Shown here piece after piece: positions 27,417 through 44,295 of a stretch of 64,000 nucleotides of DNA. The notes beneath the pieces were generated by a model that had not been told where the DNA came from, ran no database searches, and worked only from the letters and a program-made list of their open reading frames with translations. A program made the translations under genes and the position numbers. How positions within the stretch are numbered: position 1 is the stretch's first letter; each line of letters opens with the position of its first letter. The stretch covers positions 124,001 to 188,000 of IMG/VR virus record IMGVR_UViG_3300043409_000928; one strand, written 5' to 3'.

Positions 27417-27422
27417 TAAATA
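27417..27422 (+). promoter_or_regulatory. Late promoter motif TAAATA heading the glycosyltransferase operon
   Basis: gaTAAATAac in the 27390-27447 gap. Confidence 0.55.
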
Positions 27423-27447
27423 ACAACGTATATAATATTGGAATTAA

Positions 27448-27792
27448 ATGGACAGTAAAATCACAGATGCACTTGCATTTGCCAATTATAGATTAACCCT
27501 ACAAGTACAGCGCCAAAATATTGAAGCGCGAGTCCAAACGGCCCTATTGTTGTCTTATCAAAGTGCAATTTTTAAAACTACACAAGAACTAATTTCTTTT
27601 GTTGATACAAAATTGCGACTTGGTGGCAACCTTTTTGTTCAAGACCAAACCAATAATGTAATTTCCATTCTTAATCCAGCTGAATTTTTAAGCTGTTTAA
27701 TTACAACATATGATTCAGCAATGGAAATGAAGCAAACCGAGCAACATAAATTAAAGTCAGCAAGAAGCACAGCTAAAATTGTAGGACTCTAA
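27448..27792 (+). CDS. Hypothetical protein, possibly fibre assembly chaperone
   Basis: Follows the fibre/protease genes; helical. Confidence 0.4.
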   Translation: MDSKITDALAFANYRLTLQVQRQNIEARVQTALLLSYQSAIFKTTQELISFVDTKLRLGGNLFVQDQTNNVISILNPAEFLSCLITTYDSAMEMKQTEQHKLKSARSTAKIVGL

Positions 27793-27793
27793 A

Positions 27794-28672
27794 ATGAGTA
27801 CCAAAGGCTTTATGATGTTTGCTTACAATAACGAACAATTGGATTACACCCAACTGGCGTTAGTAGCGGCATACGCTGTAAAAAAACACATGCCAGACTA
27901 TCCAGTTGTGCTAGTCACGAATCAAGCCAGTCTGGAACATTGTAAAAATACACATGGCCCTGCAATAATGAATGCCGCATGGGATGATATCATATTAACT
28001 GATCCAGGCTATGAAAAGAATATGCGACTGCACCACGATGGCGCATATTATAGCTTTAATGCACAGTTTACAAATACAAACAAGCATGACATTTATAATC
28101 TAAGTCCGTTTGACGAAACTATTTTAATTGACACAGACTACTTGTGCGGCAATGCCAACTTGTCAATGCTGTTTGACAGCCAATATGATGTTGCCATGTA
28201 TAGAGATGCTCGCAATCTTCGTTATGAAGAACCCTACACAACTGAACGATGGTTACACTATGCAGGTATTCGCATGTGGTGGAGTACTGTGGTATATTGG
28301 CGCAAGAGCGAAGAAGCCAAACACTTCTTTAATATTTGGGCCGAAGTTAAAAAGAACTGGGAATATTATCGCTTCTTGTATAAGTTTCCTGGTACATTAT
28401 ATCGCACAGACTATTCAGCCAGCATTGCCGCGCACATGTGTGATGGTTGGCAAGATGGTGGCTTCATTGGCCAAATTCCTAACTTCATGCGTTACCAAGA
28501 TCAGCGCGATGATATAGTTGAAGTAAAGGGTCCTAATAGTTGGGTAATGTTAAGCAATTTACCCGACGAATGGAAGAACATGGTAGTTGAAATAGCCGGG
28601 GAAGATGTACACTTGATGAATAAAAAAAGCATACTTCGCAACTATGATCAAATTATGGAACTGTTGGCATGA
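27794..28672 (+). CDS. GT-A fold nucleotide-diphospho-sugar transferase
   Basis: SPFDETILIDTDY DxD motif; N-terminal GFMMFAYN. Confidence 0.7.
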   Translation: MSTKGFMMFAYNNEQLDYTQLALVAAYAVKKHMPDYPVVLVTNQASLEHCKNTHGPAIMNAAWDDIILTDPGYEKNMRLHHDGAYYSFNAQFTNTNKHDIYNLSPFDETILIDTDYLCGNANLSMLFDSQYDVAMYRDARNLRYEEPYTTERWLHYAGIRMWWSTVVYWRKSEEAKHFFNIWAEVKKNWEYYRFLYKFPGTLYRTDYSASIAAHMCDGWQDGGFIGQIPNFMRYQDQRDDIVEVKGPNSWVMLSNLPDEWKNMVVEIAGEDVHLMNKKSILRNYDQIMELLA

Positions 28673-29373
28673 CAACCATACATGTATTGGTATACGAAGG
28701 CCAGGCCGACTTATATAAAGTGACCGAGCAAGACGCTAAACAAGTAGACACACTCAATCAGTACAATCAAATAAATTTATTTGGATCATATGTTGATCAA
28801 CTAAAAACGCTAGCGCAGGTAGAATATCAACCAGGAGATGTTATTTGTTTTGCAGGTGCCTGCATACGACAATTTACTCAGCACATTGGCAACATTGCTA
28901 GAAATTCTAAATTAAATTATATGCCTGGACATGGAGTGGATCATAGAGGGCAACCAATACCATTTGCCAGGATTAGTCGACGAATTCCAATTGATAAAAA
29001 TTTCTATGAAGTATGGCCGTCATTGATGGTCATTGGTTGTCCTGAATCTGCTCGGTTAAGTTTTGAGACTCTGGCACAAATTGACAGCAGTCTATGCTGG
29101 CCTCACTATGAGCCAGAAAATCCAACACTAGAACATTATCTTGCAGTATTGCCATATGCGTTTGATAGTTGGATTGCGCCACACTGGTTTAAAATTGTTG
29201 ATATGAGTGTACGAGATTTAGAAGTAGTTCCAGTCATGTATGCAACGCATCGTTGGCACGATTGGATTTCTTTTTATCCTGCCAATAAAAATTTCAAGTT
29301 AGAAAATCATACACAACTCTATCCAGTTTGGCTAGCAGGAAGTAGCAAGCCATTGGAGTATTGGAATGACTGA
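28669..29373 (+). CDS. Hypothetical protein (possibly degenerate glycosyltransferase)
   Basis: Translationally coupled ORF; no clear catalytic motif. Confidence 0.4.
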   Translation: MTTIHVLVYEGQADLYKVTEQDAKQVDTLNQYNQINLFGSYVDQLKTLAQVEYQPGDVICFAGACIRQFTQHIGNIARNSKLNYMPGHGVDHRGQPIPFARISRRIPIDKNFYEVWPSLMVIGCPESARLSFETLAQIDSSLCWPHYEPENPTLEHYLAVLPYAFDSWIAPHWFKIVDMSVRDLEVVPVMYATHRWHDWISFYPANKNFKLENHTQLYPVWLAGSSKPLEYWND

Positions 29374-30346
29374 TGAAATTCAGTTTGTATTACGGACTAG
29401 GAAAAAAACTCAAGCAGAAATCTGGTCCGTAGGGTTTGACTCTAATACTGGTAATATCTTAGAAATTGTACCGGGTAATGCCAGTAAAGAAAGGGCAACA
29501 ATACAAGTTTCGTACGCTTCTGTTAAAGCAATACTTGCTGGCACAAAAAATCAAAACGACTATCGCGTAGTTTTTAATGAATCAATCGGGGCATTAGATC
29601 TGGTAGATATAAAACTGCCTACAAAAATTAAAAGAAAACACATTAACACCGGTTGGCTAAGCAACGGGGAGTATCAAGGCGAGTTAGATAGTGATATAAG
29701 AACTATACTTTTCAACGACTCGGGGATGATACGAGTTGAAGCCACAAGACAGTGGTCTACACACATTAAAGAACGCATGGAAACAAATTCACTAGAAGAA
29801 ACAATTCCGTTTTTTATCACTGACATTGAAGATCCTCATCAGCTATTTGGTAAAGGCGACATACGCCTAATAGATATAGTTGAGCGTGGATTCTGGGAAA
29901 GCCGGCTATGGGCATTTATGGATCATGATGTAGTACAAAAAATATTATACCACGGACAAAAAGTTAGGATTAATTTGCCGCCAATTGCAAAATCATTATT
30001 CTTTACAAGGCTTGGAGAATATTCACAGTTTAGTGGAGTAGTCGATGATCAGACTGTAATGAGTCATATTGGCCCAGGCAAGCACATTTCTATATTTGTC
30101 AAGGATGGCATATTATGGGCACAAAGTCATTATCAGCCCGGATCACCAATTGACAATCTGACAGGAAATTTAAAATTAGCAGTATTAAAATCAAACGACA
30201 CCGAATCCTTTGTACAATGGACACAGTTACCAGCCCTACTGCTAAGACAACATGCACCATTTGAAATTTCAAGTAAATGGCCATACAAAGGACACCCATA
30301 CATGTTATATAAAGCAAACAACCTAGATATTGGAGTACTAAATTGA
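29366..30346 (+). CDS. Hypothetical protein
   Basis: 326-aa coupled ORF. Confidence 0.5.
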   Translation: MTDEIQFVLRTRKKTQAEIWSVGFDSNTGNILEIVPGNASKERATIQVSYASVKAILAGTKNQNDYRVVFNESIGALDLVDIKLPTKIKRKHINTGWLSNGEYQGELDSDIRTILFNDSGMIRVEATRQWSTHIKERMETNSLEETIPFFITDIEDPHQLFGKGDIRLIDIVERGFWESRLWAFMDHDVVQKILYHGQKVRINLPPIAKSLFFTRLGEYSQFSGVVDDQTVMSHIGPGKHISIFVKDGILWAQSHYQPGSPIDNLTGNLKLAVLKSNDTESFVQWTQLPALLLRQHAPFEISSKWPYKGHPYMLYKANNLDIGVLN

Positions 30347-31314
30347 AAACCCCTATTACAGAATTTGATGTAGTATTCATCAGCTATGATGAACCAAATG
30401 CTGATGAGAACTATGCAGACCTATTAGAAAAATGCCCTTGGGCCAAGCGCAGTCATGGTGTGTATGGTAGCGATGCTTGCCATAAGGCAGCGGCCAAGCT
30501 GGCAGAAACAGAACGCTTTATCACAATTGATGCAGATAACAAAGTGCGAGCAGACTTCTTTGAAATGGAACTGGATTTGACCAAGTTTGATCGCAGTGAT
30601 GTACTAAGCTGGTCAGGCAAGAACGTGGTCAATGGTTTAGTTTATGGCAATGGCGGTGTTAAGCTGTGGCCCAAGAAAGTTGTTGAACAGATGCGTACAC
30701 ACGAAGCAGTTGATTCAGGCGCTGGCGCTGTGGATTTTTGTTGGGATATACATTACCATCAGTTAAACAACATCTATTCAGATGTGTACAACAATGCAAC
30801 ACCATATCAAGCATATCGTGCAGGTTTTAGAGAAGGTGTTAAACTAGCATTACATGATGGTCGTCCAATGGACTGGCGTCAAATTGCAGATAGAAATAAT
30901 TTTAAAAATCATCGTAGACTACTGGTCTGGATGAGTGTTGGCGACGATATTGACAACGGTTTGTGGGCCATGTATGGTGCCCGCTTGGGTTGTTATCTAA
31001 CCAACTTGCGAAAAGATTGGGACTACAGGCTAGTAGCCGATTTTGAATGGCACAATGCATACTGGCAAGAAGATGTTATGCCGCAGTTTGCTGGTGACGA
31101 AATTGTATGTCCAAAGTCAAAATATGCTTGGAGTAAAACAAAATTAATGGCCGAAACAATTAAGTTGGGTAAAGCATTGCATCAAGACCTGCGCCTAGAC
31201 ATTGCCACGTTAGATGCCGCTGGCAGTAAATTCTTCAAGGCAAGTTATTTCAATCCTCATCGCCTTGGCCCAACTGTCAAGGAAAGCGATGTTGAACAAT
31301 TTATTGCGGAGTAA
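30343..31314 (+). CDS. GT-A/GT2-like glycosyltransferase, paralogue 1
   Basis: DVVFISYDEPNAD...HKAAA...ITIDADN; YGNGG; GFREG. Confidence 0.65.
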   Translation: MKTPITEFDVVFISYDEPNADENYADLLEKCPWAKRSHGVYGSDACHKAAAKLAETERFITIDADNKVRADFFEMELDLTKFDRSDVLSWSGKNVVNGLVYGNGGVKLWPKKVVEQMRTHEAVDSGAGAVDFCWDIHYHQLNNIYSDVYNNATPYQAYRAGFREGVKLALHDGRPMDWRQIADRNNFKNHRRLLVWMSVGDDIDNGLWAMYGARLGCYLTNLRKDWDYRLVADFEWHNAYWQEDVMPQFAGDEIVCPKSKYAWSKTKLMAETIKLGKALHQDLRLDIATLDAAGSKFFKASYFNPHRLGPTVKESDVEQFIAE

Positions 31315-31317
31315 AGT

Positions 31318-32190
31318 TTGTTAGACGTTTTCTTTATCAGTATTGGCGAACAAGAGGCAGAAGAAAACTTTGCACGACTGCAAGAATTTGTTCCAAATGC
31401 CAAGCGTATAACAAATGTCACAGGCATTTATAATGTGCATAAGGCATGTGCTGAATTAAGTGCCACAGAAAACTTTTGGGTAGTTGATGCTGATGCATGG
31501 ATTGTGGACGGATTCGACTTTGATTGGGAACCTGATATATCTGTAATACACTGGGGTGTACCTGAAACTGAATGTGTGGCTATTTGGCCAAGTGTCAATC
31601 CAGTTAATTATTTACAGTATGGATACGGTGCAGTAAAAGTGTTCCCACGCAAACCCTTTATTGAAAACAGGCCATGGCATATTGATATGACTTCGTCCAT
31701 TGCAAATATTATTATCAATAAAGGAATTGTCAGTTGCGAAACACGATTCAACGCAACTCCTGAAAGTGCCTGGATTGGGGCATTTAGAGAATGTGCAAAA
31801 CTTGCTTCACTTTCAATGATCAAGACTCGTGTCAACAAAGCAAAAGCCGCTGAAAAGGCCGAATTGGAAGAGGTAGTAAGGTACTCTGTTGAACAAGACT
31901 GGGATTACGACAAGAAACACAACTATCGCAGAAGCAGGGCCTTGCTGGTTAAAGACAGGTATAAAAGAGAAAAGGATATCTTCACCTATTGGGATGAAAT
32001 GGTCACGGGCGGCCAAAATAAACTAGTATGGTGTACCAAAGGATGGGATAATAAAAACGGCAAGTATGCAATACTTGGCGCACAGGCAGGATCTAAATTT
32101 GGACTGATCAACAGTGACAATTTAGAAGTGCTTGATTTGATCAATGATTGGAATTGGTTAAGAAAGGAATTTAAAAATGTCAATGTTTAA
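31318..32190 (+). CDS. GT-A/GT2-like glycosyltransferase, paralogue 2
   Basis: DVFFISIGE...HKACA...WVVDADA; YGYGAVK; AFRECAKL; TTG start. Confidence 0.65.
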   Translation: MLDVFFISIGEQEAEENFARLQEFVPNAKRITNVTGIYNVHKACAELSATENFWVVDADAWIVDGFDFDWEPDISVIHWGVPETECVAIWPSVNPVNYLQYGYGAVKVFPRKPFIENRPWHIDMTSSIANIIINKGIVSCETRFNATPESAWIGAFRECAKLASLSMIKTRVNKAKAAEKAELEEVVRYSVEQDWDYDKKHNYRRSRALLVKDRYKREKDIFTYWDEMVTGGQNKLVWCTKGWDNKNGKYAILGAQAGSKFGLINSDNLEVLDLINDWNWLRKEFKNVNV

Positions 32191-33157
32191 TATTAAAACG
32201 ACAACTGGTGATTCATCAATTGCTAATTCATCAATAGTCAATATTCCGGTAGTGTTTCTTAGCTTTGATGAGCCAAATGCCGACCTGCATTGGGAAAATT
32301 TACAGTCAATTGTACCACACAAGAAAATTGCCAGGGTACATGGGGTAGTGGGATTTGATACTGCACACAAAGCCGCCGCCGCAGAGTTTCCAACAAGCAA
32401 ATACATCATCACAGTTGACGCAGATAATATTGTTGATCCTAAATTTTTTAAATTGACTATTCCTGGAAAGGCAGATGGCCAAGTCAGTTACACCTGGGGC
32501 GGCAGACAATATACAAATGGCCTAATGTACGGAAACGGTGGTTTAAAAATGTGGAGCACAGAACATCTTGCCAACATGAAAAGCCATGAGCTGGCAGATG
32601 ACCAACGTGATGCTGTAGATTTTTGTTGGGACTTTGAACGCTACAAAGACTTACCAGGTTGCTATTCTAATGTATACACAAATGCCAGTGCTTACCAAGC
32701 ATTCCGTGTGGGCTTCCGCGAAGGTGTAAAGCTGTCAATGGAACAAGGTCGTGTGCTGGCATTTGACGAATGGATAACTACAATGCATGCCGCAAACTAC
32801 CAACGATTAATAACTTGGATGACAGTGGGTGCTGATGTTGAGCATGGCATGTGGAGTGTGTACGGAGCACGACTTGCAGTGAAATTTTTGCAATATGATG
32901 ATTTTGACTTTGTAAACATACGCGACTACGCATGGTTCAATGAGTTCTTCAAACAACATGGGACAGTTGATCCAGTTAAAGGTAGTAAAGTACTGGGCAA
33001 ACAAATTAGTGAGGGTCTGGGTTGGATACTACCTGATTTTGATAGTGAACAAAGTTCGTTTATTAAACAAATACAATTGCATCCAGCCAAAGCACTCACA
33101 CACGAAGATGTTGTATGGCGTACCAATTTAAGTTTATATGGATGGTTCCGTGGATAG
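32177..33157 (+). CDS. GT-A/GT2-like glycosyltransferase, paralogue 3
   Basis: VVFLSFDEPNAD...HKAAA...ITVDADN; YGNGG; GFREG. Confidence 0.65.
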   Translation: MSMFNIKTTTGDSSIANSSIVNIPVVFLSFDEPNADLHWENLQSIVPHKKIARVHGVVGFDTAHKAAAAEFPTSKYIITVDADNIVDPKFFKLTIPGKADGQVSYTWGGRQYTNGLMYGNGGLKMWSTEHLANMKSHELADDQRDAVDFCWDFERYKDLPGCYSNVYTNASAYQAFRVGFREGVKLSMEQGRVLAFDEWITTMHAANYQRLITWMTVGADVEHGMWSVYGARLAVKFLQYDDFDFVNIRDYAWFNEFFKQHGTVDPVKGSKVLGKQISEGLGWILPDFDSEQSSFIKQIQLHPAKALTHEDVVWRTNLSLYGWFRG

Positions 33158-34319: not shown

Positions 34320-34837
34320 TGTCAGCTGACTCAAGGTTTAAAAAGTACAACTTTCAAATTGATTTAGAGCGTTTAAAAGAAGAAACTGAACGGCTTCTTT
34401 TTGATTCTTCTACGGGCAAATATCGTACACAAATGTCCCTGCAAACAAACGGAACAACTGATTGGGATTCTAGCACAGGTACAAGAGAAGGTGATGATGA
34501 AGCACAGTGGGATCAAATACATCCTGAATTGGCAGGCACCTGGTGGGATGATTTCTTAAAAGGATTTCCATTTAAACTGTATCGCGCTCGACTAATGACA
34601 ATGCATCCACGTACCTGTTATAGTATACATACTGATATGAATCCCAGGATACACATTGCCATCAAAACCCATCGGCAGGCCCGTTTTATCTTTACAGCAC
34701 CACCGTCAAACACACACCTTCCAGCCGACGGGAGTGTATGGTGGATCGATACCACAAAAGAACATTCAGCAATGAACGGTAGCATGGAAGATCGCATTCA
34801 TTTAGTTGCTTGCTTGGTAAACACAGCAGAAGAATAA
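34319..34837 (+). CDS. Asp/Asn beta-hydroxylase family 2OG-Fe(II) dioxygenase
   Basis: RARLM..HP...YSIHTD...RIHIAI...EHSAMN...RIHLV; start at TAATG overlap. Confidence 0.8.
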   Translation: MSADSRFKKYNFQIDLERLKEETERLLFDSSTGKYRTQMSLQTNGTTDWDSSTGTREGDDEAQWDQIHPELAGTWWDDFLKGFPFKLYRARLMTMHPRTCYSIHTDMNPRIHIAIKTHRQARFIFTAPPSNTHLPADGSVWWIDTTKEHSAMNGSMEDRIHLVACLVNTAEE

Positions 34838-34841
34838 TGTA

Positions 34842-34847: not shown

Positions 34848-34852
34848 TAGAC

Positions 34853-37949: not shown

Positions 37950-38611
37950 ATGTACGACTACTCAGCTACTCAAACCCAACTGAAGAATTTGCAAATTTGG
38001 GCATCACGGATGCACAGGAACTCATTGCGTATTGCGCCCGTGTGTCCAATCCTGCCAACCAACTTAACACTGAGACATCAGAAAAGCTTATCCGATACCT
38101 TATCAAACACAGTCATTGGAGCCCACTCGAAATGGTCAGTGCCTGTATTGAAATCACAACTACTCGAGACATTGCCCGACAAATCTTGCGACACAGAAGT
38201 TTCAGCTTCCAAGAGTTCAGTCAGCGATATGCTGATCCTACTAAAGACCTGTCATTTGTACTTAGAGAAGCACGGTTACAAGATCCCAAAAATAGACAAA
38301 ACAGTATTGACGCTGTAGAGCACGAAACACAAATGGTTTGGCTTGATAAACAACAAACAGTCATTGACGCGGCCACTAATGCATATGATTGGGCCATTGC
38401 TAATGGCATTGCTAAAGAACAAGCAAGGGCGGTGCTACCAGAAGGTAATACAGTTAGTCGCTTATATATGAACGGCACATTGCGCTCATGGATTCACTTT
38501 ATTGAACTACGCTCTGCAAATGGCACACAGAAAGAGCATCAGGAAGTGGCACGGGCCTGTGCCCAAGTAATTGCTGAAATCTTTCCAATGGCAACTGACT
38601 TAGTCGTCTAA
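37946..38611 (+). CDS. thyX: FAD-dependent thymidylate synthase
   Basis: HWSPLE; RHRSFSFQEFSQRY ThyX motif. Confidence 0.95.
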   Translation: MNVRLLSYSNPTEEFANLGITDAQELIAYCARVSNPANQLNTETSEKLIRYLIKHSHWSPLEMVSACIEITTTRDIARQILRHRSFSFQEFSQRYADPTKDLSFVLREARLQDPKNRQNSIDAVEHETQMVWLDKQQTVIDAATNAYDWAIANGIAKEQARAVLPEGNTVSRLYMNGTLRSWIHFIELRSANGTQKEHQEVARACAQVIAEIFPMATDLVV

Positions 38612-39664
38612 TTCCTTTGTGGCAGTCAATGAACCATCTTCATTCTGCCACAAAAATCCCCAAGCATTGTTGTAACGAGTAATACTTGGCAAACTTGGCC
38701 ATTTGGTTTTATAGTTGAAGTATTGTTCGTTTGCCCATACATCATTAATAATTTGTTTAGCAGGTAGCTTGTAAGTATTCCACTTGCCACCTACCTTGGG
38801 CTCATTTGTATATAATGCCCATTGCTGATAAGCTTCACTATCAAAGAAGTTTACAACATTGCTGGCCATGTATACTGCCTGTTCAGCAGTGGGGCTATGC
38901 ATACTCATACGATACTTAACAGCTTGCCACTTCATTGAGTAGTTCAGCCACCAAAGAAAATCGTGGTTTGTATTGATAGGAACAGGACACGCAGTCACAA
39001 GATCCCATAACATTGATTCTCGTTCATCTCTATAATTGTCACACTTGTCTAAAAGCCACGGTAAGCTTTCTGTTCTATAATCACCATGTATGGAATCAAA
39101 TTTGCCTGTATTATCCATGTAACCTTTTAAGGTTAAACTGCCAAACAAGTTGTCGGCACATTCACCAGTGATGCATACATTGCGTGTGTCGTTGATAATA
39201 CCATAGAAGTTATTACTTGGTAGTAGGCGTTGTCCAAAGTTTGGCAATATGATTTGATCAAAGAATTTTTGATTTTCAAGTTGACTATCTTCGTTTACAG
39301 CACACCATACATTCTTCTTAATAACTTCCCAGTCTGGATGACTAATCAGCAATGTTACAATTAGTGTACTATCAATTCCACCACTAAAAAATATTACTAA
39401 TCGTTCCCTGCCCGGATCGTTTAGTTTGGCAATGCATTCGTCAATGCGTGTATAACTAGCGGCGCTAAAGCTATGCATAATTTCTGGCCTTGGCGGAATA
39501 GGGCTATTATTGTAAATTTCAATGCCCGGGATATCAAGTGTACCAGTTCTATCATTTAAACTGATCCACGGGTTAAACATTTCAACAAACTCTTTGGTAA
39601 CGGGATCAATATTTCTATCACTACGATAGAGTCTATGTGGAATATAATATAATAATTTTTTCAT
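38600..39664 (-). CDS. Asparagine synthetase-like PP-loop ATP-dependent amide ligase
   Basis: IFFSGGIDST and ITGECADNLFG. Confidence 0.7.
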   Translation of the reverse strand: MKKLLYYIPHRLYRSDRNIDPVTKEFVEMFNPWISLNDRTGTLDIPGIEIYNNSPIPPRPEIMHSFSAASYTRIDECIAKLNDPGRERLVIFFSGGIDSTLIVTLLISHPDWEVIKKNVWCAVNEDSQLENQKFFDQIILPNFGQRLLPSNNFYGIINDTRNVCITGECADNLFGSLTLKGYMDNTGKFDSIHGDYRTESLPWLLDKCDNYRDERESMLWDLVTACPVPINTNHDFLWWLNYSMKWQAVKYRMSMHSPTAEQAVYMASNVVNFFDSEAYQQWALYTNEPKVGGKWNTYKLPAKQIINDVWANEQYFNYKTKWPSLPSITRYNNAWGFLWQNEDGSLTATKELDD

Positions 39665-39666
39665 AG

Positions 39667-40287
39667 TTACATCATCATTGTTAAAAAGGAATCTTCTTCC
39701 ATTGCTGTTCTACATTTGGCAATGTCGTCTTTATTCTTGGCATTGCGAATAGCAATTTGGTGCCGTGCTCGTAATCTTTCAAGTTTACGTATTAAAAATT
39801 TTCTGTTTTGGTATTTGTTTACAATAATGCCAGCGGCAACATTAATAGTCAAGCCGCTTTCTTCTGCATAGTCACTGACCATATTGGATTCTCCTACACC
39901 ACTTTCAATCACAGTCATGGCCTGCTTATATTTTTCTTCGTATGCTTCTATTTGCCATTGATTTTGTATTTCAAATCTTTTAAAGCCATGGGCCAAGCGA
40001 TGTTGAAGCTCAACCAGTAATCCTACTTTAGTTTGCAGATTGTGACTTAGTGCTACAAGTTCTAGGTCTTTACGATGCGGCACAAACGTGGTAACCTTAG
40101 GACCTTTAAATTGAATTCTAAAGTCTAAATTAAAATTTCGTAGTTGTTGCGCCGGTAAATCATCAACGCTGTATATTCTAGAAATGGCTCTAAATTCATT
40201 TTGACAAGCACTTTCCAGAACTGATAAATTTTCACACCAAGCGAGTACTTCATTTTCCGCCGTGCAAGCAATTGCTAACCATTGCAT
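39667..40287 (-). CDS. Hypothetical protein, C-terminus resembles phage tail-fibre assembly helical domain
   Basis: Y..K...A......YAEE.G.T....A..I..K......LE..R pattern; GGAG RBS. Confidence 0.3.
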   Translation of the reverse strand: MQWLAIACTAENEVLAWCENLSVLESACQNEFRAISRIYSVDDLPAQQLRNFNLDFRIQFKGPKVTTFVPHRKDLELVALSHNLQTKVGLLVELQHRLAHGFKRFEIQNQWQIEAYEEKYKQAMTVIESGVGESNMVSDYAEESGLTINVAAGIIVNKYQNRKFLIRKLERLRARHQIAIRNAKNKDDIAKCRTAMEEDSFLTMMM

Positions 40288-40333
40288 AGTGGTCTCCTAT
40301 ATACTGTTATATACCTATATAATTTAGTTGATG

Positions 40334-40858
40334 TTAACCAATAGAAATATCTGGTGAAAACCGAACACTAAGCATGAGTCTTCTTTTGTCACTGTGATTA
40401 ATAACCTGGTGAGGAACATCTATTTTAACAATTGTGGGCTTATCAACAATGATTGATTGTTGTATTTGTTTTTCTTCGTCCCAGTTAAGTTCTAAATATT
40501 TTAGGCCTTGCGTATTTGCAGTTTCGCTTAGATGAAATTTACCAGAGTACCAAATCATCTCACCAGCATCACAATTGGCAATTGGAATATTCAATGCACA
40601 GTTACTTGCACCCCTACGGTCGACATCATAGCCATCAACATGTATTGCTTGTGTGCTAGTTGGACCTTGCCCAAATACTATTGCACTTTTGAGTTTTAAC
40701 GTACTTCCCAGTGTTGATTCTAATATGTCTGCTAACCAAATGTTATCTTCCTGAGTACAAATATAGCTCTGTTGTGTAGCAACATCGGGCATAAGCCCTT
40801 GGAAACGCTCAACAATGGCTGTACAATTGGCCAGCTCAATGTGTTTATATAATTGCAT
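40334..40858 (-). CDS. 2OG-Fe(II) dioxygenase-like protein
   Basis: IHVDG...ALNIPI...PHQVIN...RLMLSVRF. Confidence 0.65.
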   Translation of the reverse strand: MQLYKHIELANCTAIVERFQGLMPDVATQQSYICTQEDNIWLADILESTLGSTLKLKSAIVFGQGPTSTQAIHVDGYDVDRRGASNCALNIPIANCDAGEMIWYSGKFHLSETANTQGLKYLELNWDEEKQIQQSIIVDKPTIVKIDVPHQVINHSDKRRLMLSVRFSPDISIG

Positions 40859-40862
40859 ATTC

Positions 40863-40904
40863 TATTTATCTTGGCGTAAACAACAAATCTATTATCTATA
40901 AATA
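40863..40904. promoter_or_regulatory. Back-to-back late promoter motifs (TAAATA minus 40863-40868; TATAAATA plus 40897-40904)
   Basis: Each lies 4-5 nt before a divergent ATG. Confidence 0.7.
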
Positions 40905-40909
40905 GCAGT

Positions 40910-41362
40910 ATGGAATACATTATAACTTTTTTGGTCTGGACTCTCTACTTGTATGTGATTCATCGCGTAATACATGGGGTAGGATTAAAGTTCTTTCCTG
41001 TTGCGTTCAAGGCACACGCTGATCACCACAAATATATTAATACCCACGAGCAAACCAAATGGCACTGGAACAACTTGTTCTTGTTCAACGATACTTGGAC
41101 AAGTACATTGGATCTTTGGATTACAGAAGTCATTCCAACTTTGGTTTTTAGTTGGATAACAGGTTACTGGTGGATCAGCGTATTTTATTATCTATGGGCG
41201 GCACTGGTGCAAGAAACAATTGAACACAATCCAAAATTCAACGTCTATCCGTACCTTACAAGTGGAAAGTGGCACCTAATTCACCATCGAGATACCACTG
41301 CTAATTATGGATTGTTTATTCCGCTGTGGGATAAACTATTTGGCACACTTACTCGTGCCTAG
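40910..41362 (+). CDS. Fatty acid hydroxylase/sterol desaturase family membrane protein
   Basis: HRVIH, HADHH, HLIHH...NYG....WDKLFGT. Confidence 0.85.
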   Translation: MEYIITFLVWTLYLYVIHRVIHGVGLKFFPVAFKAHADHHKYINTHEQTKWHWNNLFLFNDTWTSTLDLWITEVIPTLVFSWITGYWWISVFYYLWAALVQETIEHNPKFNVYPYLTSGKWHLIHHRDTTANYGLFIPLWDKLFGTLTRA

Positions 41363-42063
41363 GCAAATTGAAACTTTTTAGTTGGCCCAAATCTTTCTGC
41401 CCAGTCGTGGTATGCAAACAGTGTCTGATCGGGTGCTTCAACTTCGCGCTGTAATATTACATTCCATATGTCCATGAAATGTCTTTTAATAAGGCGTTGT
41501 GTATGCATGTCATCAACCGGATATGTTCTAATTGAAACACCGTCACCTGTGTCAATGAAAATTTGTGCAGGCCCGTTTCTAATGCCCATGTCATCTAGTG
41601 CTTTAAATGCATACTCAACTTTATTTACAAACTCTTGAGCTGATTGGTTTTCGAACAATGTCCATTTTCCTTCTTTAAAAGATAAACAGCAATTTAGTAC
41701 GTGCTGGCCTTTGTAAGAAACAGTTTCAAATAAAAATGTCCCTTCTTGTTCACTGCCATTGTACCAATTTTCCAATCGTGCAGTAGCCTTGTCTTTAAGA
41801 TTTGAAAGTAGTATCCTATCTTCTTGCGTTAGCCTTTCAACTAATCGTTGTCCAGCAAGATTACAGCCGATTGCACTTTTGAATGTTGCATCATCACTGA
41901 ATGGCGGGCCAGTATTGTGATTATAAAGAAATTTACTATCAATGCTATAAGAAACTAACTGCCCAGCGGTTACAACAATGTTATAAGTGATGCCTTTTTC
42001 TTTAAAGAAGTCCAGAAAGTTATAGTGATTTTGTGTAGGGTTGACCAACAATATATCAATCAT
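41359..42063 (-). CDS. Hypothetical protein with degenerate ATP-grasp-like C-terminus
   Basis: ALDDMGIRNGPAQIFI resembles the ATP-grasp LG...G..H.E segment; catalytic residues not clear. Confidence 0.3.
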   Translation of the reverse strand: MIDILLVNPTQNHYNFLDFFKEKGITYNIVVTAGQLVSYSIDSKFLYNHNTGPPFSDDATFKSAIGCNLAGQRLVERLTQEDRILLSNLKDKATARLENWYNGSEQEGTFLFETVSYKGQHVLNCCLSFKEGKWTLFENQSAQEFVNKVEYAFKALDDMGIRNGPAQIFIDTGDGVSIRTYPVDDMHTQRLIKRHFMDIWNVILQREVEAPDQTLFAYHDWAERFGPTKKFQFA

Positions 42064-42067
42064 TGTA

Positions 42068-42370
42068 TTATTCCTGATTAAAGTGAGTGGCCAATAGTGC
42101 TCCAACAAATCTTGTCACTTTTGATTTGATCAGCTCACTGTTCATCATTACTTCAAAGTCTACAATTTGGTCTAAGTATTGCTCTAATTGTTTGATCCCA
42201 AGTACTTCTTTACTTGTTTTAATATCGCTTAGGTCTTTTTGTTTGAAGATAATTTCTGTGCCATCTGCAAGATATACTTTGATCCAATCTATATATTCAA
42301 CAGGCACTTCTTCAACATGAACTTCTCTAAGCATGTCTTCAAAACTACGATCTTTCTTGCGGATGCTCAT
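42068..42370 (-). CDS. Hypothetical protein
   Basis: 100-aa acidic ORF. Confidence 0.5.
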   Translation of the reverse strand: MSIRKKDRSFEDMLREVHVEEVPVEYIDWIKVYLADGTEIIFKQKDLSDIKTSKEVLGIKQLEQYLDQIVDFEVMMNSELIKSKVTRFVGALLATHFNQE

Positions 42371-42413
42371 TTATTATTCCAAAAAGATTTAATACGGCCA
42401 AGTAACGATGGAT

Positions 42414-43040
42414 TTATGCCACCATCTTTACCTTTGTTGGTCTGCCACGGCCCCTCTTGTTTTCGGTCGCTGTCAATGAGGCTTGATTTTCTTGGACGAC
42501 CGCGACCGCGCCTTTTGGGTCCAGTTTCTCAGCCTCCTCACGCAGGCGTCTTACTTCGACTTCAAATGTATTTGCTTGTTGACGAAACTTTGCCGCTAGA
42601 GATTCATCTGTAATAACTCCTGTGGAGTTGCTTGGCAAATTTTGTGCAATGTCAGCAGACCTAGTTCCAGTTGCTGCCTGAGTGTTTGCAATACCTTTAA
42701 GCTGTTTGTTCAGTTCAACAAGATTAATTTCAACACCGGACTGTGGCGTCATCATAATACTCTTAGTTGGAACCTTAACCATCCATCCGCGTTGATGAAT
42801 GGTATTCAGCATATTTGTACCATCGGTAAACTGTTGCCTAAACAACCAGTCACTCGGGTCTAGCATATCTTGACAACCAGATGTTTCAATAGCTCTAATT
42901 AAGTCATCGTGGTATAACGCAGTCAGCATTCCAGTTGGAACTACCAATGCATGTTCTGGATCTCCAGGAACTTCACGAAATACAACTACAACTTTGTTAC
43001 CTTGTCCATTGATTCCGACATGTTTAATAAATTTTGCCAT
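42414..43040 (-). CDS. Hypothetical protein
   Basis: Start reassigned to MAKFIKHVG after GGAG RBS. Confidence 0.55.
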   Translation of the reverse strand: MAKFIKHVGINGQGNKVVVVFREVPGDPEHALVVPTGMLTALYHDDLIRAIETSGCQDMLDPSDWLFRQQFTDGTNMLNTIHQRGWMVKVPTKSIMMTPQSGVEINLVELNKQLKGIANTQAATGTRSADIAQNLPSNSTGVITDESLAAKFRQQANTFEVEVRRLREEAEKLDPKGAVAVVQENQASLTATENKRGRGRPTKVKMVA

Positions 43041-43062
43041 CTTAGCAACTCCTTTAATGTTG

Positions 43063-43329
43063 TTACTCGGTAACTTCTGCAGGTACCTCTTCTCCAGCTG
43101 GTGCTGGTGTACTCTCTGGTGTTGCAACCATTGGTTCATTTGTTTTTAAGAAATTCGCCAACTTGTTATAAGTGGCCCCAATAATTTCCATTTCATTTGC
43201 ACGGAATGCTCCACGCTGTGCGCCCAACTCTACTGCACCTGCAAGAACTTTCATATCTTGTAAAGTCAGTGTAACTGGTGCTGGTTGTGCTTCTTGTGCA
43301 ACTTCTTGTGTATCTTGTACTTGTTCCAT
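43063..43329 (-). CDS. Hypothetical small phage protein
   Basis: AGGAG RBS; RGAFRANE motif. Confidence 0.55.
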   Translation of the reverse strand: MEQVQDTQEVAQEAQPAPVTLTLQDMKVLAGAVELGAQRGAFRANEMEIIGATYNKLANFLKTNEPMVATPESTPAPAGEEVPAEVTE

Positions 43330-43405
43330 TTAAAATCTCCTAGGTTAGAACGGAATATCCATCACGAATACTTATAGTGCTATTCTACCTAGATTTAACC
43401 AAAAA

Positions 43406-44284
43406 TTAGGCGCTAACAATTCTTATTTTCCTACGATCCTTTTCACTTCTACACTGATTCATTGTGCAGGCAAATGGTTGTGTAGGTGGACACCATGCAG
43501 GATCAAACGCATTGAAGTGCTCGTTTCTGCCACCACATTGACTGTATGATACAAATCCTTTGGGGTTTATATATAACCAATCAACCCCTGCATAGCAAGG
43601 CATTCCTGTATACACAGGATCTGTGTCATTGACTATTCGTAAATCAATGTACCTAGGATCTGGCAAGTTTAGATCAACAATAACGGGCTCTGATATATAA
43701 TCATCAGGTCTGCCAAAAATTCTGTTTTCATCAATTGTACTGTATCCGCTGTACAGCTCGCCATTTTCGTTATACAATATTTGTTCACAGCAGTGGTACC
43801 CTAAGTTTTTAAAGTACTCTACTTTTTGTCTAAACTCAAAAACACGACCCGGAACTAACGGAACTTCAATTGATACTTCTATGTTTTTTTCTTGACATTG
43901 CTCCAATATAAATCCAACCACATCATCGTTTTGCCATTCGTGGTAAGTGAGTTTAAGTCTATCAATTAAATTTAACACCCCGTACAGTGCAAAATACGTA
44001 TCATCACCACTGGTATCTAATCTTATAATACAAGGCTGTTCTCTCATTTTTTTTAGCAATGTACTCAGGTCAGGGAAGTTCAGTGGTTCACCGCCACCTA
44101 TCTTCCAAAGTATTTTAGAGTGATGTTGTAGTCTTGTATTTTGTAATTTTTCAATGACAGAGAGATACTGGTCAACGGGCCTGTCTAAATTTCCAGTTCT
44201 AAATTGTGGCTGGCAATAAGAACATTGTAGTTTGCAATGAGCATTTAAAAGCCAAGTTACCTCTGCATGGTCTAGTTCTATCAT
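43406..44284 (-). CDS. Radical SAM enzyme with Cys-rich (twitch/SPASM-like) C-terminus
   Basis: CKLQCSYC; GGGEP; PCYAG...QCG...C....AC..NQC. Confidence 0.85.
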   Translation of the reverse strand: MIELDHAEVTWLLNAHCKLQCSYCQPQFRTGNLDRPVDQYLSVIEKLQNTRLQHHSKILWKIGGGEPLNFPDLSTLLKKMREQPCIIRLDTSGDDTYFALYGVLNLIDRLKLTYHEWQNDDVVGFILEQCQEKNIEVSIEVPLVPGRVFEFRQKVEYFKNLGYHCCEQILYNENGELYSGYSTIDENRIFGRPDDYISEPVIVDLNLPDPRYIDLRIVNDTDPVYTGMPCYAGVDWLYINPKGFVSYSQCGGRNEHFNAFDPAWCPPTQPFACTMNQCRSEKDRRKIRIVSA

Positions 44285-44289
44285 GTGTA

Positions 44290-44295
44290 TATTTA
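44290..44295 (-). promoter_or_regulatory. Late promoter motif TAAATA, 5 nt before the radical SAM ATG
   Basis: tTAAATAtacacATG. Confidence 0.65.

What the first reader, a model, noticed from the sequence alone, without database searches (positions are those of the whole stretch)
27417..44295. Late tailoring-enzyme cluster right behind the virion appendage genes: candidate virion decoration system
Seen: directly after the fibre and protease-GGY genes lie at least 4 GT-A glycosyltransferases, a SAM methyltransferase, two HxD..H dioxygenases, GNAT-like proteins, two PP-loop ligases, two His-box di-iron enzymes and a radical SAM. TAAATA late motifs precede the GT operon (27417), the dioxygenase and hydroxylase (40863-40904) and the radical SAM (44290), with a variant before the GNAT (34842), whereas thyX inside the cluster has its own sigma70 promoter. 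Established: gp55-type late promoters drive assembly-stage genes, and phage glycosyltransferases can glycosylate virion proteins. Inference: this is a multi-step glycosylation/hydroxylation/acylation/amidation pathway acting on virion proteins rather than on DNA.
Basis: partly seen in the sequence, partly recalled or inferred. Interest (0 to 1): 0.8.

Follow-up and report, generated by a model that had tools for sequence, protein, structure and literature searches.

The report
Glycan-building operon behind phage tail genes
An uncultured 285-kb lake phage carries, directly behind its baseplate and fibre genes, a conserved operon of sugar-transferring enzymes plus a variable set of tailoring enzymes, which most likely builds a decorated glycan on the virus particle, although the molecule that receives the sugars is not yet known.

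Summary
Genes p1 to thyX (27448-38611) form one tightly packed + strand operon. Its core holds a GT8-like enzyme (p2), a decayed copy of it (p3), three paralogous GT-A enzymes with an invariant DxD (p5-p7; p5 confirmed by structure prediction) and a methyltransferase-like protein (p8).

The order u3-u4-p1-p2-p2'-p4-p5 recurs behind the baseplate/fibre genes in at least 16 diverged phage lineages, including cultured Ralstonia phage RsoM2USA. TAAATA is depleted in the window (32 sites against about 69 expected) but sits conserved before the structural gene u4 (20/20 relatives), p1 (29/32) and p17 (11/12). thyX has its own conserved TGCTATAAT.

The accessory enzymes look more like sugar tailoring than side-chain chemistry: a GNAT-like protein, an asparagine-synthetase-like protein, a PP-loop protein, cupin/2OG enzymes and a radical SAM. 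GalE, a sugar dehydrogenase, a nucleotidyltransferase and a GT4 lie elsewhere in the window. The two His-box enzymes are membrane proteins that probably act on lipids. The accessory genes are missing from one close relative.

The acceptor (virion protein, DNA or envelope) is not established. I read this as a new variant of virus-encoded glycosylation, of moderate interest.

The parts
13282..27389 (+). Upstream virion genes. They comprise a giant structural protein (13282-21888, 2868 aa), u3 (21915-22547), the fibre/tail-pin-like u4 (22600-23667), and a 1238-aa protein (23673-27389) with an S8 subtilase domain, an InlB B-repeat and (GGY)n repeats.
   Evidence: The giant protein matches RsoM2USA ORF361, which was detected in virions (PMC8504454). 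u3 and u4 match proteins annotated as structural or tail pin in PA5oct, Atu_ph07 and BF-like jumbo phages. Peptidase_S8 scores 7e-28, and the GGY repeats were read.
27403..27436 (+). Covarying hairpin with TAAATA (27417-27422) in its loop, 25 nt before the p1 start codon.
   Evidence: TAAATA is conserved in 29 of 32 distinct relatives. The stem is 71.5% paired against 24-46% for slid controls, 10 of 13 pairs change on both sides, and there are 19 G-U cells. The fold z-score is -6.5.
27448..27792 (+). p1, a 114-aa protein of unknown function and the first gene of the operon.
   Evidence: It keeps its position in diverged lineages at 31-40% identity. It has no family hit.
27794..28672 (+). p2, a GT8-like (retaining GT-A) glycosyltransferase with a DTD motif.
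   Evidence: D113 and D115 are invariant. The atlas gives GT8/Mannosyl_trans3 neighbours. Glycogenin matches at E 0.028. Identity is 80-91% within the clade.
28669..29373 (+). p3, a decayed paralogue of p2. The DxD is lost in this clade.
   Evidence: hhalign against p2 gives E 0.005 over the DxD region. Other lineages show tandem p2 hits at this position.
29366..30346 (+). p4, an unknown beta-rich protein that keeps its position but evolves fast.
   Evidence: Identity is 48-66% where p5 is 83-95%. The AlphaFold model is poor, pLDDT 59. It shows no similarity to p5.
30343..33157 (+). p5 (30343-31314), p6 (31318-32190) and p7 (32177-33157): three paralogous GT-A glycosyltransferases of a family without a Pfam model.
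   Evidence: Paralogy and the invariant DxD are shown. The p5 model has pLDDT 86. Foldseek hits are all GT-A enzymes. The family has more than 7565 members with no Pfam domain.
33138..34319 (+). p8, with an unknown N-terminal domain and a class-I methyltransferase-like C-terminal domain (33768-34319).
   Evidence: The motifs GGWVG, D277 and D279 are invariant. The domain family has 1344 representatives, some fused to GT2 and some with weak Methyltransf/Spermine_synth hits. There is no direct Pfam or PDB hit.
34286..34837 (+). p9, a member of the Asp/Asn beta-hydroxylase (cupin, Fe/2OG) family.
   Evidence: Pfam PF05118 scores 2.5e-8 and 34.4 bits, above the cut-off. TAAATA at 34246 inside p8 is kept in 14 of 22 relatives.
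34853..37047 (+). p10 (GNAT-like lead), p11 (PP-loop ATP pyrophosphatase) and p12 (unknown). TACATA-N5-ATG lies at 34842.
   Evidence: p10. p11: SGGLDS is invariant and there is a weak NAD synthetase match. p12: nothing found. TACATA or a near variant is kept at the same spacing in the relatives displayed.
37044..37949 (+). p13, a membrane fatty-acid-desaturase-family di-iron enzyme.
   Evidence: PF00487 scores 2.9e-14. It is DesA-like. TM segments lie at 21-52 and 173-202. A homologue lies beside the GT operon in the distant locus L082.
37919..38611 (+). thyX (37946-38611), with its own extended -10 element TGCTATAAT (37919-37927) inside the end of p13.
   Evidence: Thy1 scores 6.8e-45. The motif, or TGCTATA with a varying tail, is kept in the relatives displayed.
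38600..40858 (-). A - strand unit of p17 (40334-40858, HxD..H cupin/2OG-like), p16 (39667-40287, unknown) and p15 (38600-39664, asparagine-synthetase-like PP-loop enzyme without a glutaminase domain). It is headed by TAAATA-N4-ATG at 40868.
   Evidence: p17 invariants H73, D75 and H150. p15 has SGGIDS, and its homologues carry PF00733. The motif is kept in 11 of 12 relatives.
40899..41362 (+). p18 (40910-41362), a small membrane enzyme of the FA_hydroxylase family, headed by TAAATA-N5-ATG.
   Evidence: PF04116 scores 3.6e-13. A TM segment lies at 3-21. Relatives carry TAAGTA at the same spacing.
41359..43329 (-). p19-p22, four small or unknown proteins. p21 has a basic AT-hook-like tail. None is a recognisable enzyme.
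   Evidence: No family hits. Translations were read.
43406..44331 (-). p23, a radical SAM enzyme with a C-terminal Cys cluster (43406-44284). It is preceded by TAAATA-N5-ATG (44295) and an intrinsic terminator (44311-44331) that ends the upstream MoxR-VWA unit.
   Evidence: CxxxCxxC is present. Radical_SAM scores 1.5e-4 and NrdG2/MoaA/QueE-type hits are below their cut-offs.
54603..62595 (-). Outside the finding: sugar-nucleotide and glycan genes. They are an NDP-sugar dehydrogenase (54603-55400), a ferredoxin (56161-56484), an RfaE-II/TagD-like nucleotidyltransferase (59970-60431), GalE (60389-61438) and a GT4 glycosyltransferase (61384-62595).
   Evidence: GalE TIGR01179 scores 1.3e-84, above the cut-off. 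NDP-sugDHase scores 1.6e-29, rfaE_dom_II 1.6e-19, Glycos_transf_1 5.9e-5 and Fer4/DUF3470 1e-14.

Best explanation
The region is not one uniform pathway. Its core is a phage-encoded glycan-assembly operon wired to the tail/fibre module.

Shown:
- p2, p5, p6 and p7 are soluble GT-A-type glycosyltransferases, and p3 is a decayed copy of p2.
- p8 carries a methyltransferase-like domain that is fused to GT2 domains in other proteins.
- The block u3-u4-p1-p2-p2'-p4-p5 is kept behind the baseplate/fibre genes across a very large, mostly uncultured group of aquatic jumbo phages.
- The block carries the same conserved TAAATA signal as structural gene u4.

Inferred:
- Late in infection, in the cytoplasm, these enzymes use nucleotide sugars to build a short glycan on virion proteins. 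The phage's own GalE, NDP-sugar dehydrogenase and nucleotidyltransferase would help supply those sugars.
- The most likely acceptors are the fibre-like u4 family, the giant protein or the S8/GGY protein encoded just upstream. p8 would methylate the glycan.
- The variable accessory enzymes most likely tailor the sugars (N-acylation, amidation of uronic acids, oxidation, C-modification) rather than amino-acid side chains. These are GNAT-like p10, AsnB-like p15, PP-loop p11, cupin/2OG p9 and p17, and radical SAM p23. In relatives they include extra radical SAMs, RmlC and an E1 dehydrogenase.
- The membrane di-iron enzymes p13 and p18 probably modify host lipids.
- thyX is an embedded nucleotide-metabolism gene with its own sigma70-type promoter.
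For: - GT-A fold and DxD.
- GT8-like p2.
- p3 as a p2 paralogue.
- p8 domain fused to GT2, with weak methyltransferase hits in homologues.
- Synteny with structural genes in RsoM2USA, L082, L084, the P0113 contig and 12 phage-type loci from MAG bins.
- Whole-cluster synteny within the freshwater clade.
- Upstream genes are virion proteins; PMC8504454.
- TAAATA is depleted overall yet conserved before u4 (20/20), p1 (29/32) and p17 (11/12).
- The GTs have no TM segments.
- Sugar-nucleotide genes lie in the window, and RmlC, E1_dh and many radical SAMs lie next to p5 in relatives.
- p15 belongs to the Asn-synthetase family.
- Cellular homologues of p5 (40% identity) sit in GT4/GT28-like loci of Rhodobacterales chromosomes, which argues for a glycan rather than a phage-DNA role.
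- Virion glycoproteins are reported for jumbo phage XacN1 (PMC5852040). Mycobacteriophage capsid and tail-tube glycosylation is cited in PMC12619734.
Against: - There is no direct evidence for any acceptor.
- No Ser/Thr-rich acceptor tails occur in u3, u4 or the giant protein. The only such feature is a TTTPPPTT linker in the S8 protein.
- XacN1 lacks the p2 and p5 families, so its glycoproteins are not evidence for this operon.
- The best fold matches of p5 are teichoic-acid glycosyltransferases, at low TM of about 0.3.
- The family calls for p8, p10, p11 and p17 rest on motifs or leads.
- thyX sits in the same operon, so the unit is not purely an assembly-stage unit.
- The G-U pairs in the hairpin around the p1 TAAATA suggest read-through RNA, which complicates the promoter reading.
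- Lake metatranscriptome contigs only show sparse presence and give no timing.
- Synteny between phages that share ancestry can persist without functional coupling.
Confidence: 0.45

Rival explanations
1. Host-envelope or free-glycan remodelling. The GTs and tailoring enzymes would build or modify a cell-surface glycoconjugate (LPS, capsule, teichoic-acid-like polymer) or membrane lipids of the infected cell. The purpose could be to block superinfection, prevent progeny from re-adsorbing, or alter the membrane. The virion would not be the target.
For: - The best solved-structure matches of p5 are wall-teichoic-acid glycosyltransferases RmlT, TarS and TarP.
- GT8 enzymes commonly act on LPS, from my own knowledge.
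- The Asp_Arg_Hydrox family, to which p9 belongs, includes the lipid A hydroxylase LpxO, from my own knowledge.
- p13 and p18 are membrane lipid desaturase/hydroxylase-family enzymes.
- Cellular p5 homologues lie beside a peptidoglycan-binding caspase/Sel1 protein and GT4/GT28-like genes.
Against: - The GTs have no membrane segment.
- The strict, ancient linkage to baseplate/fibre genes and the shared late-type signal are not expected for envelope remodelling.
- In known cases envelope remodelling is mostly a temperate-phage trait, whereas this is a jumbo lytic-type genome.
- The fold matches are weak (TM about 0.3).
Confidence: 0.2
2. DNA hypermodification. The GTs would glycosylate modified bases in phage DNA. 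p8/p9 or other enzymes would prepare the base, and the PP-loop, GNAT and radical SAM enzymes would add further groups. The purpose would be to evade restriction.
For: - Phage GTs are classically DNA-modifying, and GT clusters next to methyltransferase and oxygenase genes are known for 5hmC glycosylation (bioRxiv 10.1101/2023.12.21.572611; PMC13326640).
- The order GT-GT-GT-methyltransferase-like-oxygenase (p5-p9) superficially resembles that arrangement.
- FolE, a PP-loop protein and a radical SAM recall 7-deazaguanine pathways.
- One GT2 domain fused to a p8-like domain gave a weak TAGT hit at E 0.008.
Against: - p8 has no C5- or N6-DNA-methyltransferase motifs (no PC and no (D/N)PPY; read).
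- p9 belongs to the Asp/Asn hydroxylase family, not TET/JBP.
- Pfam found no QueC, QueD, DpdA, dNMP hydroxymethylase or TET in the window.
- The TAGT hit overlaps a much stronger GT2 hit.
- Full-length 40% identical p5 homologues are chromosomal genes of free-living Rhodobacterales.
- The location is inside the late structural arm.
- Only 64 kb of the 285-kb genome was seen, so a base-modifying enzyme elsewhere is not excluded.
Confidence: 0.12
3. One late pathway from 27417 to 44295 would modify virion protein residues directly, in a RiPP-like manner. Steps would include glycosylation, Asp/Asn hydroxylation, acylation, amidation and radical SAM chemistry on a fibre or on the GGY-repeat protein.
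For: - The Asp_Arg_Hydrox family acts on protein Asp/Asn residues.
- Asn-synthetase-like enzymes, SPASM-like radical SAMs, GNATs and S8 proteases all occur in peptide maturation, from my own knowledge.
- An S8 protease with Tyr/Gly repeats is encoded immediately upstream.
- Promoter-type motifs are shared across the units.
Against: - Two of the enzymes are integral membrane lipid-type oxygenases.
- The accessory genes are absent from L078 while the core and the structural genes stay.
- The S8/GGY protein itself is often missing or replaced in relatives.
- The window and its relatives carry sugar-nucleotide enzymes that give the same enzyme classes a simpler role.
- No precursor-peptide-like feature was found.
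Confidence: 0.1
4. There is no common function. A real GT operon would be followed by an island of unrelated auxiliary metabolic genes (lipid desaturase/hydroxylase, thyX, amidoligases, radical SAM) that simply accumulate at the junction between the late and early arms.
For: - The accessory genes are dispensable (L078).
- There is a strand switch, with several separate promoter-type signals and a terminator.
- thyX has its own sigma70-type promoter.
- Lipid desaturases are known stand-alone phage auxiliary genes, from my own knowledge.
Against: - Homologues of p15 and p13, plus radical SAMs, lie next to the GT operon again in the distant locus L082.
- The variable genes next to p5 in other lineages are repeatedly sugar-tailoring types.
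- The units share the TAAATA-type signal.
Confidence: 0.13

Closest known systems
Mycobacteriophage virion glycosylation (Che8, Corndog and Myrna type; Freeman et al. 2023, as cited in PMC12619734)
   Same: The phage encodes several GT-A-type glycosyltransferases, presumably acting in the cytoplasm on structural proteins. A Che8 glycosyltransferase appears among the weak structural matches of p5.
   Different: There is no detectable sequence relationship. The operon here is fused to the baseplate/fibre module. It carries a methyltransferase-like gene and many tailoring enzymes. No Ser/Thr-rich C-terminal acceptor tails were seen. The acceptor is unproven.
Chlorovirus PBCV-1 capsid glycosylation (multidomain GT-GT-methyltransferase A064R and partners) and Mimivirus fibril glycosylation clusters
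   Same: The virus encodes soluble GTs together with a sugar methyltransferase and nucleotide-sugar enzymes that decorate virion surface proteins. Relatives of p8 are fused to GT2 domains, the same domain logic as A064R, which I recall from my own knowledge. PBCV-1 is cited for this role in PMC5852040.
   Different: Those are eukaryotic giant viruses. Here the genes lie in a tailed-phage late operon.
Core putative glycosyltransferases of 'moraphages', large aquatic jumbo phages (PMC12619734)
   Same: These are aquatic uncultured jumbo phages up to 307 kb in which four orthogroups of putative glycosyltransferases belong to the core genome, with an unknown target.
   Different: Whether this contig is a moraphage could not be checked. 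That paper does not describe the linkage to fibre genes, the tailoring genes or the promoter signals. The sigma70-type TTGACA-N17-TATACT promoters seen here do not look like those of the Bacteroidota hosts proposed for moraphages.
Phage DNA glycosylation systems (T4 alpha/beta-glucosyltransferases; methyltransferase + 5mYOX/TET + GT clusters)
   Same: Phage-encoded GTs sit near methyltransferase-like and oxygenase-like genes.
   Different: No DNA-methyltransferase motifs or TET/JBP-type oxygenase, and no hydroxymethylase in the window. The genes sit in the late structural arm. Close family members occur in bacterial chromosomes.
T4 gp55-type late promoters (TATAAATA)
   Same: The core TAAATA is depleted in coding sequence and conserved before structural and cluster genes.
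   Different: The full 8-mer occurs only once, at 40897. Nine sites lie 4-5 nt from the start codon, which would give leaderless mRNAs. At least three sit in hairpin loops. No gp55 homologue was looked for outside the window.

Membership tests
GT-A fold glycosyltransferases (GT2-like), for p5-p7 | Single Rossmann-like alpha/beta/alpha GT-A fold | tested here: met
   The p5 model has pLDDT 86. All significant Foldseek hits are GT-A enzymes, although TM is only about 0.3 to PDB entries and 0.59 to uncharacterised viral proteins.
GT-A fold glycosyltransferases (GT2-like), for p5-p7 | DxD metal/nucleotide-sugar motif after beta4 | tested here: met
   D63-A-D65 is invariant in 22 sequences, including p6 and p7.
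GT-A fold glycosyltransferases (GT2-like), for p5-p7 | Match to a curated GT family model (Pfam Glycos_transf_2 or similar) | tested here: not met
   No Pfam, PHROGs or NCBIfam hit. None of the 120 listed homologues has a Pfam domain.
GT-A fold glycosyltransferases (GT2-like), for p5-p7 | Sugar transfer from a nucleotide sugar | not testable with these tools
   This needs an enzyme assay.
GT8 (retaining GT-A), for p2 | DxD motif and similarity to GT8 members | tested here: inconclusive
   DTD is invariant. The glycogenin match is at E 0.028 only. The atlas neighbours carry Glyco_transf_8 or Mannosyl_trans3. There is no direct Pfam hit.
Class I SAM methyltransferase, for the p8 C-terminal domain | GxGxG SAM-binding loop followed by an acidic residue at the end of beta2 | tested here: met
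   GGWVG, D277 and D279 are invariant.
Class I SAM methyltransferase, for the p8 C-terminal domain | Match to a methyltransferase family model or structure | tested here: inconclusive
   p8 itself has none. Homologues give weak Methyltransf_11/25 or Spermine_synth hits inside the domain (E 4e-4 to 0.04).
PP-loop ATP pyrophosphatases / asparagine-synthetase-like, for p11 and p15 | SGGxDS PP-loop motif | tested here: met
   It is invariant in both families and is the only region the two share.
PP-loop ATP pyrophosphatases / asparagine-synthetase-like, for p11 and p15 | Family model match | tested here: inconclusive
   p15 hits Asn_synthase at 21.1 bits, right at the cut-off. Thirteen homologues carry PF00733. 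p11 has only NAD synthetase at E 0.035, and its homologues have no Pfam domain.
Fe(II)/2-oxoglutarate or cupin oxygenases, for p9 and p17 | HxD/E...H metal triad in a double-stranded beta-helix | tested here: met
   p9 matches Pfam Asp_Arg_Hydrox over its full length. p17 has H73, D75 and H150 invariant. The fold of p17 was not modelled.
Radical SAM, for p23 | CxxxCxxC cluster motif and family model | tested here: inconclusive
   The motif CKLQCSYC is present. Radical_SAM scores 22.4 bits, below the cut-off of 29.5. Many radical SAM NCBIfam models score below their cut-offs.
GNAT acyltransferases, for p10 and p12 | GNAT fold with acyl-CoA-binding motif A | tested here: inconclusive
   p10 has atlas neighbours and a neighbour structure that resemble GNATs, but no Pfam or PDB hit. 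p12 has no support at all.
Phage virion glycosylation system | Glycan covalently attached to virion structural proteins by phage GTs | not testable with these tools
   Only context is available: conserved linkage to structural genes and a shared signal with u4.
Phage virion glycosylation system | Recognisable acceptor segments (Ser/Thr-rich tails) in structural proteins | tested here: not met
   None occur in u1-u4 or the giant protein. The only such feature is a TTTPPPTT linker in the S8 protein.
Phage DNA glycosylation / hypermodification system | Enzyme that creates the acceptor base (dNMP hydroxymethylase, TET/JBP, DNA methyltransferase, DpdA) | tested here: not met
   Pfam found none among about 60 ORFs of the window. 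The remaining 220 kb of the genome was not seen.
T4 gp55-type late promoter | TATAAATA at -10 before late genes, dependent on a gp55-like sigma factor | tested here: inconclusive
   The core TAAATA is conserved before the structural gene u4 and the cluster genes and is depleted elsewhere. The full 8-mer occurs once. The sigma factor and transcription starts were not tested.

The most novel reading that the evidence does not exclude
A very large, almost entirely uncultured group of aquatic jumbo phages carries a hard-wired glycan factory inside its tail/fibre module. The p5 family alone has more than 7500 members and no Pfam model. The factory would be built from uncatalogued GT-A families plus a swappable cassette of radical SAM, amidoligase, acyl- and methyl-transferases. 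These phages would coat their fibres or baseplate with diverse, lineage-specific tailored glycans. That would be a phage counterpart of Mimivirus fibril glycosylation, expressed from TAAATA signals that give leaderless late mRNAs and in places sit in RNA hairpin loops.
Probability: 0.3. Interest if true: 0.8.

Novelty: new variant of a known kind. Interest (0 to 1): 0.55.

Why it matters
Virus-encoded glycosylation of particles is established for chloroviruses, mimiviruses and a few mycobacteriophages. It is almost unexplored in phages of Gram-negative and aquatic bacteria.

Three things would follow if this operon decorates fibres or the baseplate:
- A glycan layer would be a widespread determinant of adsorption, host range, particle stability and escape from host or grazer recognition in freshwater and marine jumbo phages.
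- Several abundant protein families that now have no annotation would gain one. These are the p5, p2 and p8 C-terminal domain families, and p1, p3 and p4.
- The variable cassette next to p5 would be a source of new sugar-tailoring chemistry.

A cultured member, Ralstonia phage RsoM2USA, carries the core, so the question can be tested directly. The TAAATA-N4/5-ATG arrangement and the hairpin-loop TAAATA would also be of interest for phage late transcription.

Tried and rejected
- Megablast of the region against cultured phages found nothing.
- Pfam, PHROGs and NCBIfam gave no hit for p1-p8 and p10-p12.
- Profile searches against PDB sequences gave nothing useful for p8 whole, the p8 C-terminal domain, p10, p12 or p17.
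- The AlphaFold model of p4 was too poor to search (pLDDT 59). p4 is not a p5 paralogue.
- p10 and p12 are not related to each other. p11 and p15 share only the PP-loop.
- Lake-water metatranscriptome contigs cover the region only as short low-depth pieces from relatives. They give no transcript ends or timing, and none spans the hairpin.
- Rfam found no known RNA family in the window.
- The two-hexamer sigma70 scan was uninformative (77 sites against 57+-8) and missed the thyX extended -10.
- I considered and rejected a 7-deazaguanine pathway (FolE, radical SAM, PP-loop), because Pfam found no QueC, QueD or DpdA and p23 scores far below the QueE cut-offs.
- I considered a methyltransferase + TET + GT DNA pathway for p5-p9 and rejected it on motifs and family.
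- XacN1 glycoproteins (PMC5852040) cannot be credited to this operon, because XacN1 lacks the p2 and p5 families.
- The PA5oct transcriptome paper defines no TAAATA-type late motif.
- The Freeman et al. paper on mycobacteriophage glycosylation was not available to read.
- One DNA alignment was a mistaken test and carries no information.

Full report
**Origin.** The window is part of IMG/VR contig IMGVR_UViG_3300043409_000928, 285,304 bp. It comes from an uncultured jumbo phage that occurs in lake-water samples. It has no nucleotide-level relative among cultured phages. Its baseplate and tail proteins are distantly like those of PA5oct, Atu_ph07, BF/RaK2-type phages and Ralstonia phage RsoM2USA.

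**Layout.**
- The finding covers 14 + strand genes, p1 to thyX (27448-38611). They are packed with overlaps or gaps of at most 15 nt.
- A - strand unit follows, p17-p16-p15 (40858 down to 38600).
- Next is a lone + strand gene, p18 (40910-41362).
- The tail of a long - strand unit follows, p23-p19 (44284 down to 41359). It is separated from the MoxR/VWA genes by a strong intrinsic terminator at 44311-44331.
- Upstream lie a VgrG-like spike, a baseplate wedge protein, a 2868-aa structural protein, u3, the fibre/tail-pin-like u4, and a 1238-aa protein with an S8 protease domain and GGY repeats.

**Check of the gene calls.**
- p5, p6, p7: they are paralogues at 39% and 34% identity, and the DxD (D63, D65) is invariant. 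The p5 model (pLDDT 86) matches only GT-A glycosyltransferases. These are RmlT, TarS, TarP and SunS in the PDB, and GtrB, GT25, GT2 and a Che8 enzyme among viral models. TM scores to PDB entries are low, about 0.3.
- p2: it has an invariant DTD, GT8/Mannosyl_trans3 neighbours in the atlas, and a weak glycogenin match.
- p3: it is a decayed p2 paralogue. hhalign gives E 0.005, and other lineages have two tandem p2-like genes at this position.
- p4: it remains unknown.
- p8: its C-terminal domain has a GGWVG..D..D signature. Its family has 1344 cluster representatives. Some members are fused to GT2 domains, and some give weak class-I methyltransferase hits inside the domain.
- p9: a bona fide member of the Asp/Asn beta-hydroxylase family.
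- p17: an invariant HxD...H.
- p10: a GNAT lead. p12 has none.
- p11 and p15: both carry SGGxDS. The p15 family includes members with Pfam Asn_synthase.
- p13 and p18: membrane proteins of the FA_desaturase and FA_hydroxylase families.
- p23: CxxxCxxC and a C-terminal Cys cluster.
Several calls rest only on motifs or leads.

**Check of the signals.**
- TAAATA occurs 32 times against 69.5+-7.9 expected, so it is avoided.
- About half of the sites lie just upstream of genes in the sense orientation.
- In relatives it is kept before u4 (20/20 distinct sequences), p1 (29/32, including lineages with only 31-40% identity in p1), p17 (11/12) and p9 (14/22).
- TACATA (or a near variant) before p10, and TAAGTA before p18, keep the same spacing in relatives.
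- The cluster therefore shares a conserved signal with a structural gene. This supports co-expression with virion genes, though timing was not measured.
- thyX has TGCTATAAT at 37919-37927, an extended -10.

**Two surprises in the signals.**
- Nine of the 32 TAAATA sites are followed after 4-5 nt by an ATG that opens an ORF of 103-292 aa, where 1.3 would be expected. With T4 late-promoter geometry, recalled from my own knowledge, these would be leaderless mRNAs.
- The p1 site lies in the loop of a hairpin (27403-27436) whose stem covaries across 26 relatives and includes 19 G-U cells. This points to an RNA structure in read-through transcripts. Similar TAAATA-in-loop hairpins occur at 9706 and 48202.
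- I cannot explain these features. They make 'gp55-type promoter' an untested label.

**Linkage to structural genes.**
- In RsoM2USA the homologues ORF353 (p2), ORF352 (p2-like), ORF350 (p5), ORF348 (p6-like) and ORF347 (p8-like) lie shortly after baseplate wedge ORF362, ORF361 (the 2541-aa virion protein), tail sheath ORF359 and structural protein ORF356 (PMC8504454).
- The order giant protein, u3, u4, (variable), p1, p2, p2', p4-like, p5 recurs in several places. These are a 348-kb contig (L082), an 87-kb contig (L084), the P0113 contig, and 12 phage-type contigs binned into MAGs. It holds down to 37% p5 identity.
- Within the freshwater clade the whole p1-p18 order is kept.
- The enzymes p2, p5 and p13 are more conserved (75-91%) than the structural proteins and p4.

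**What varies.**
- Downstream of p5, other lineages carry three to six radical SAM genes, extra GT paralogues, a dTDP-sugar isomerase (RmlC family) and a thiamine-dependent E1 enzyme.
- L078 lacks p10-p13, p15-p18 and p23.
- L082 again has p15 and p13 homologues and radical SAMs beside the operon.
- The rest of the window encodes GalE (above the NCBIfam cut-off), an NDP-sugar dehydrogenase, an RfaE-II/TagD-like nucleotidyltransferase, a GT4 enzyme and a ferredoxin.
- Together this looks like a conserved glycan-assembly core with a swappable sugar-tailoring cassette.
- In that frame the GNAT-like, AsnB-like and methyltransferase-like proteins have ordinary roles: N-acylation, uronamide or amidino formation, and O-methylation. 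These roles are inferred from what such families do in bacterial glycan pathways, from my own knowledge.
- The membrane di-iron enzymes fit lipid substrates and not virion proteins.

**Acceptor.** Nothing here identifies it.
- For virion proteins: the conserved linkage, the shared signal, the soluble GTs, and precedent in mycobacteriophages and chloroviruses.
- Against DNA: there are no DNA-methyltransferase or TET features and no base-modifying enzyme in the window. In addition, 40% identical full-length p5 homologues sit in a conserved chromosomal GT4 / 145-aa / p5-like locus next to GT28-like and caspase-Sel1 genes in many Rhodobacterales.
- For an envelope target: the teichoic-acid GT fold matches and the lipid enzymes.

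**Comparison and novelty.**
- The closest known systems are mycobacteriophage virion glycosylation, PBCV-1 and Mimivirus glycosylation clusters, and the core putative GTs noted in 'moraphages' (PMC12619734).
- This case differs in four ways: its GT families have no Pfam model, it is integrated into the tail/fibre module, it has a large tailoring cassette, and its signals are unusual.
- It is a new variant of a known kind.
- A cultured carrier of the core exists, so simple experiments can settle the acceptor.

Noticed in passing
window 3556, 9706, 21910, 40899 (+); 40868, 44295, 48202, 48901, 63409 (-): TAAATA is followed after 4-5 nt by an ATG that opens an ORF of 103-292 aa, at 9 of 32 sites (1.3 expected). 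With T4-like geometry these genes would have leaderless or near-leaderless mRNAs. For 9696-10097 and 21915-22547 it also suggests that the true starts are 9717 and 21921.
   Followed up: partly
window 27403-27436; also 9698-9727 and 48183-48204 (-): TAAATA sits in the loop of hairpins. The one before p1 covaries across 26 relatives and uses G-U pairs, so it is probably an RNA structure on the + strand. Its role (processing site, partial terminator, protein-binding site) and its relation to promoter function are unexplained. It has no Rfam match.
   Followed up: partly
window 37919-37927: An extended -10 element, TGCTATAAT, lies inside the 3' end of the desaturase gene, 18 nt before the thyX start. 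Relatives keep it or TGCTATA with a varying tail. Canonical TTGACA-N17-TATACT promoters are visible before 2493-3479 (-) and 49252-50235 (-). This suggests a host with ordinary sigma70 promoters.
   Followed up: partly
window 23673-27389: A 1238-aa protein combines an S8 subtilase domain, a TTTPPPTT linker, an InlB-type B-repeat, Cys-containing repeats and long (GGY)n runs near the C-terminus. It is often absent or replaced in close relatives.
   Followed up: no
window 54603-62595 (-): A second set of glycan genes lies on the other strand. It holds GalE, an NDP-sugar dehydrogenase that seems to lack its N-terminal Rossmann part (the upstream ORF 55397-56161 has no hit), an RfaE-II/TagD-like nucleotidyltransferase, a GT4 enzyme and a ferredoxin. 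GTP cyclohydrolase I (57938-58816), a phosphoribosyltransferase (56883-57401) and an NMN-adenylyltransferase-like gene (3567-4214) are also present.
   Followed up: partly
L092-L113, L121 (for example L106: 6477-8918): Full-length homologues of p5 (about 40% identity) are chromosomal in Roseibium, Sulfitobacter, Ruegeria, Tateyamaria, Cribrihabitans and other Rhodobacterales. They sit in a conserved locus of GT4, a 145-aa protein and the p5-like gene, next to a 775-aa GT28-like protein and a caspase-Sel1-peptidoglycan-binding protein. The function is unknown.
   Followed up: partly
window 29366-30346 (p4) and 27448-27792 (p1): Two non-enzyme-looking proteins keep fixed positions inside the GT operon in all lineages. 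They evolve much faster than the enzymes (p4 48-66% identity where p5 is 83-95%). They may be adaptors, chaperones or acceptors.
   Followed up: partly
L088, L090, L115, L119, L120, L122 (upstream of the p2 homologues): The fibre/tail-pin-like gene u4 is present in two to three tandem copies in several lineages, directly before the GT operon.
   Followed up: no
window 44348-47013 (-): A MoxR-type AAA ATPase (45913-47013) is paired with a DUF2201 metallopeptidase/VWA protein (44348-45556). Both are preceded by TAAATA at 47052 and 45600, and a strong terminator follows.
   Followed up: no
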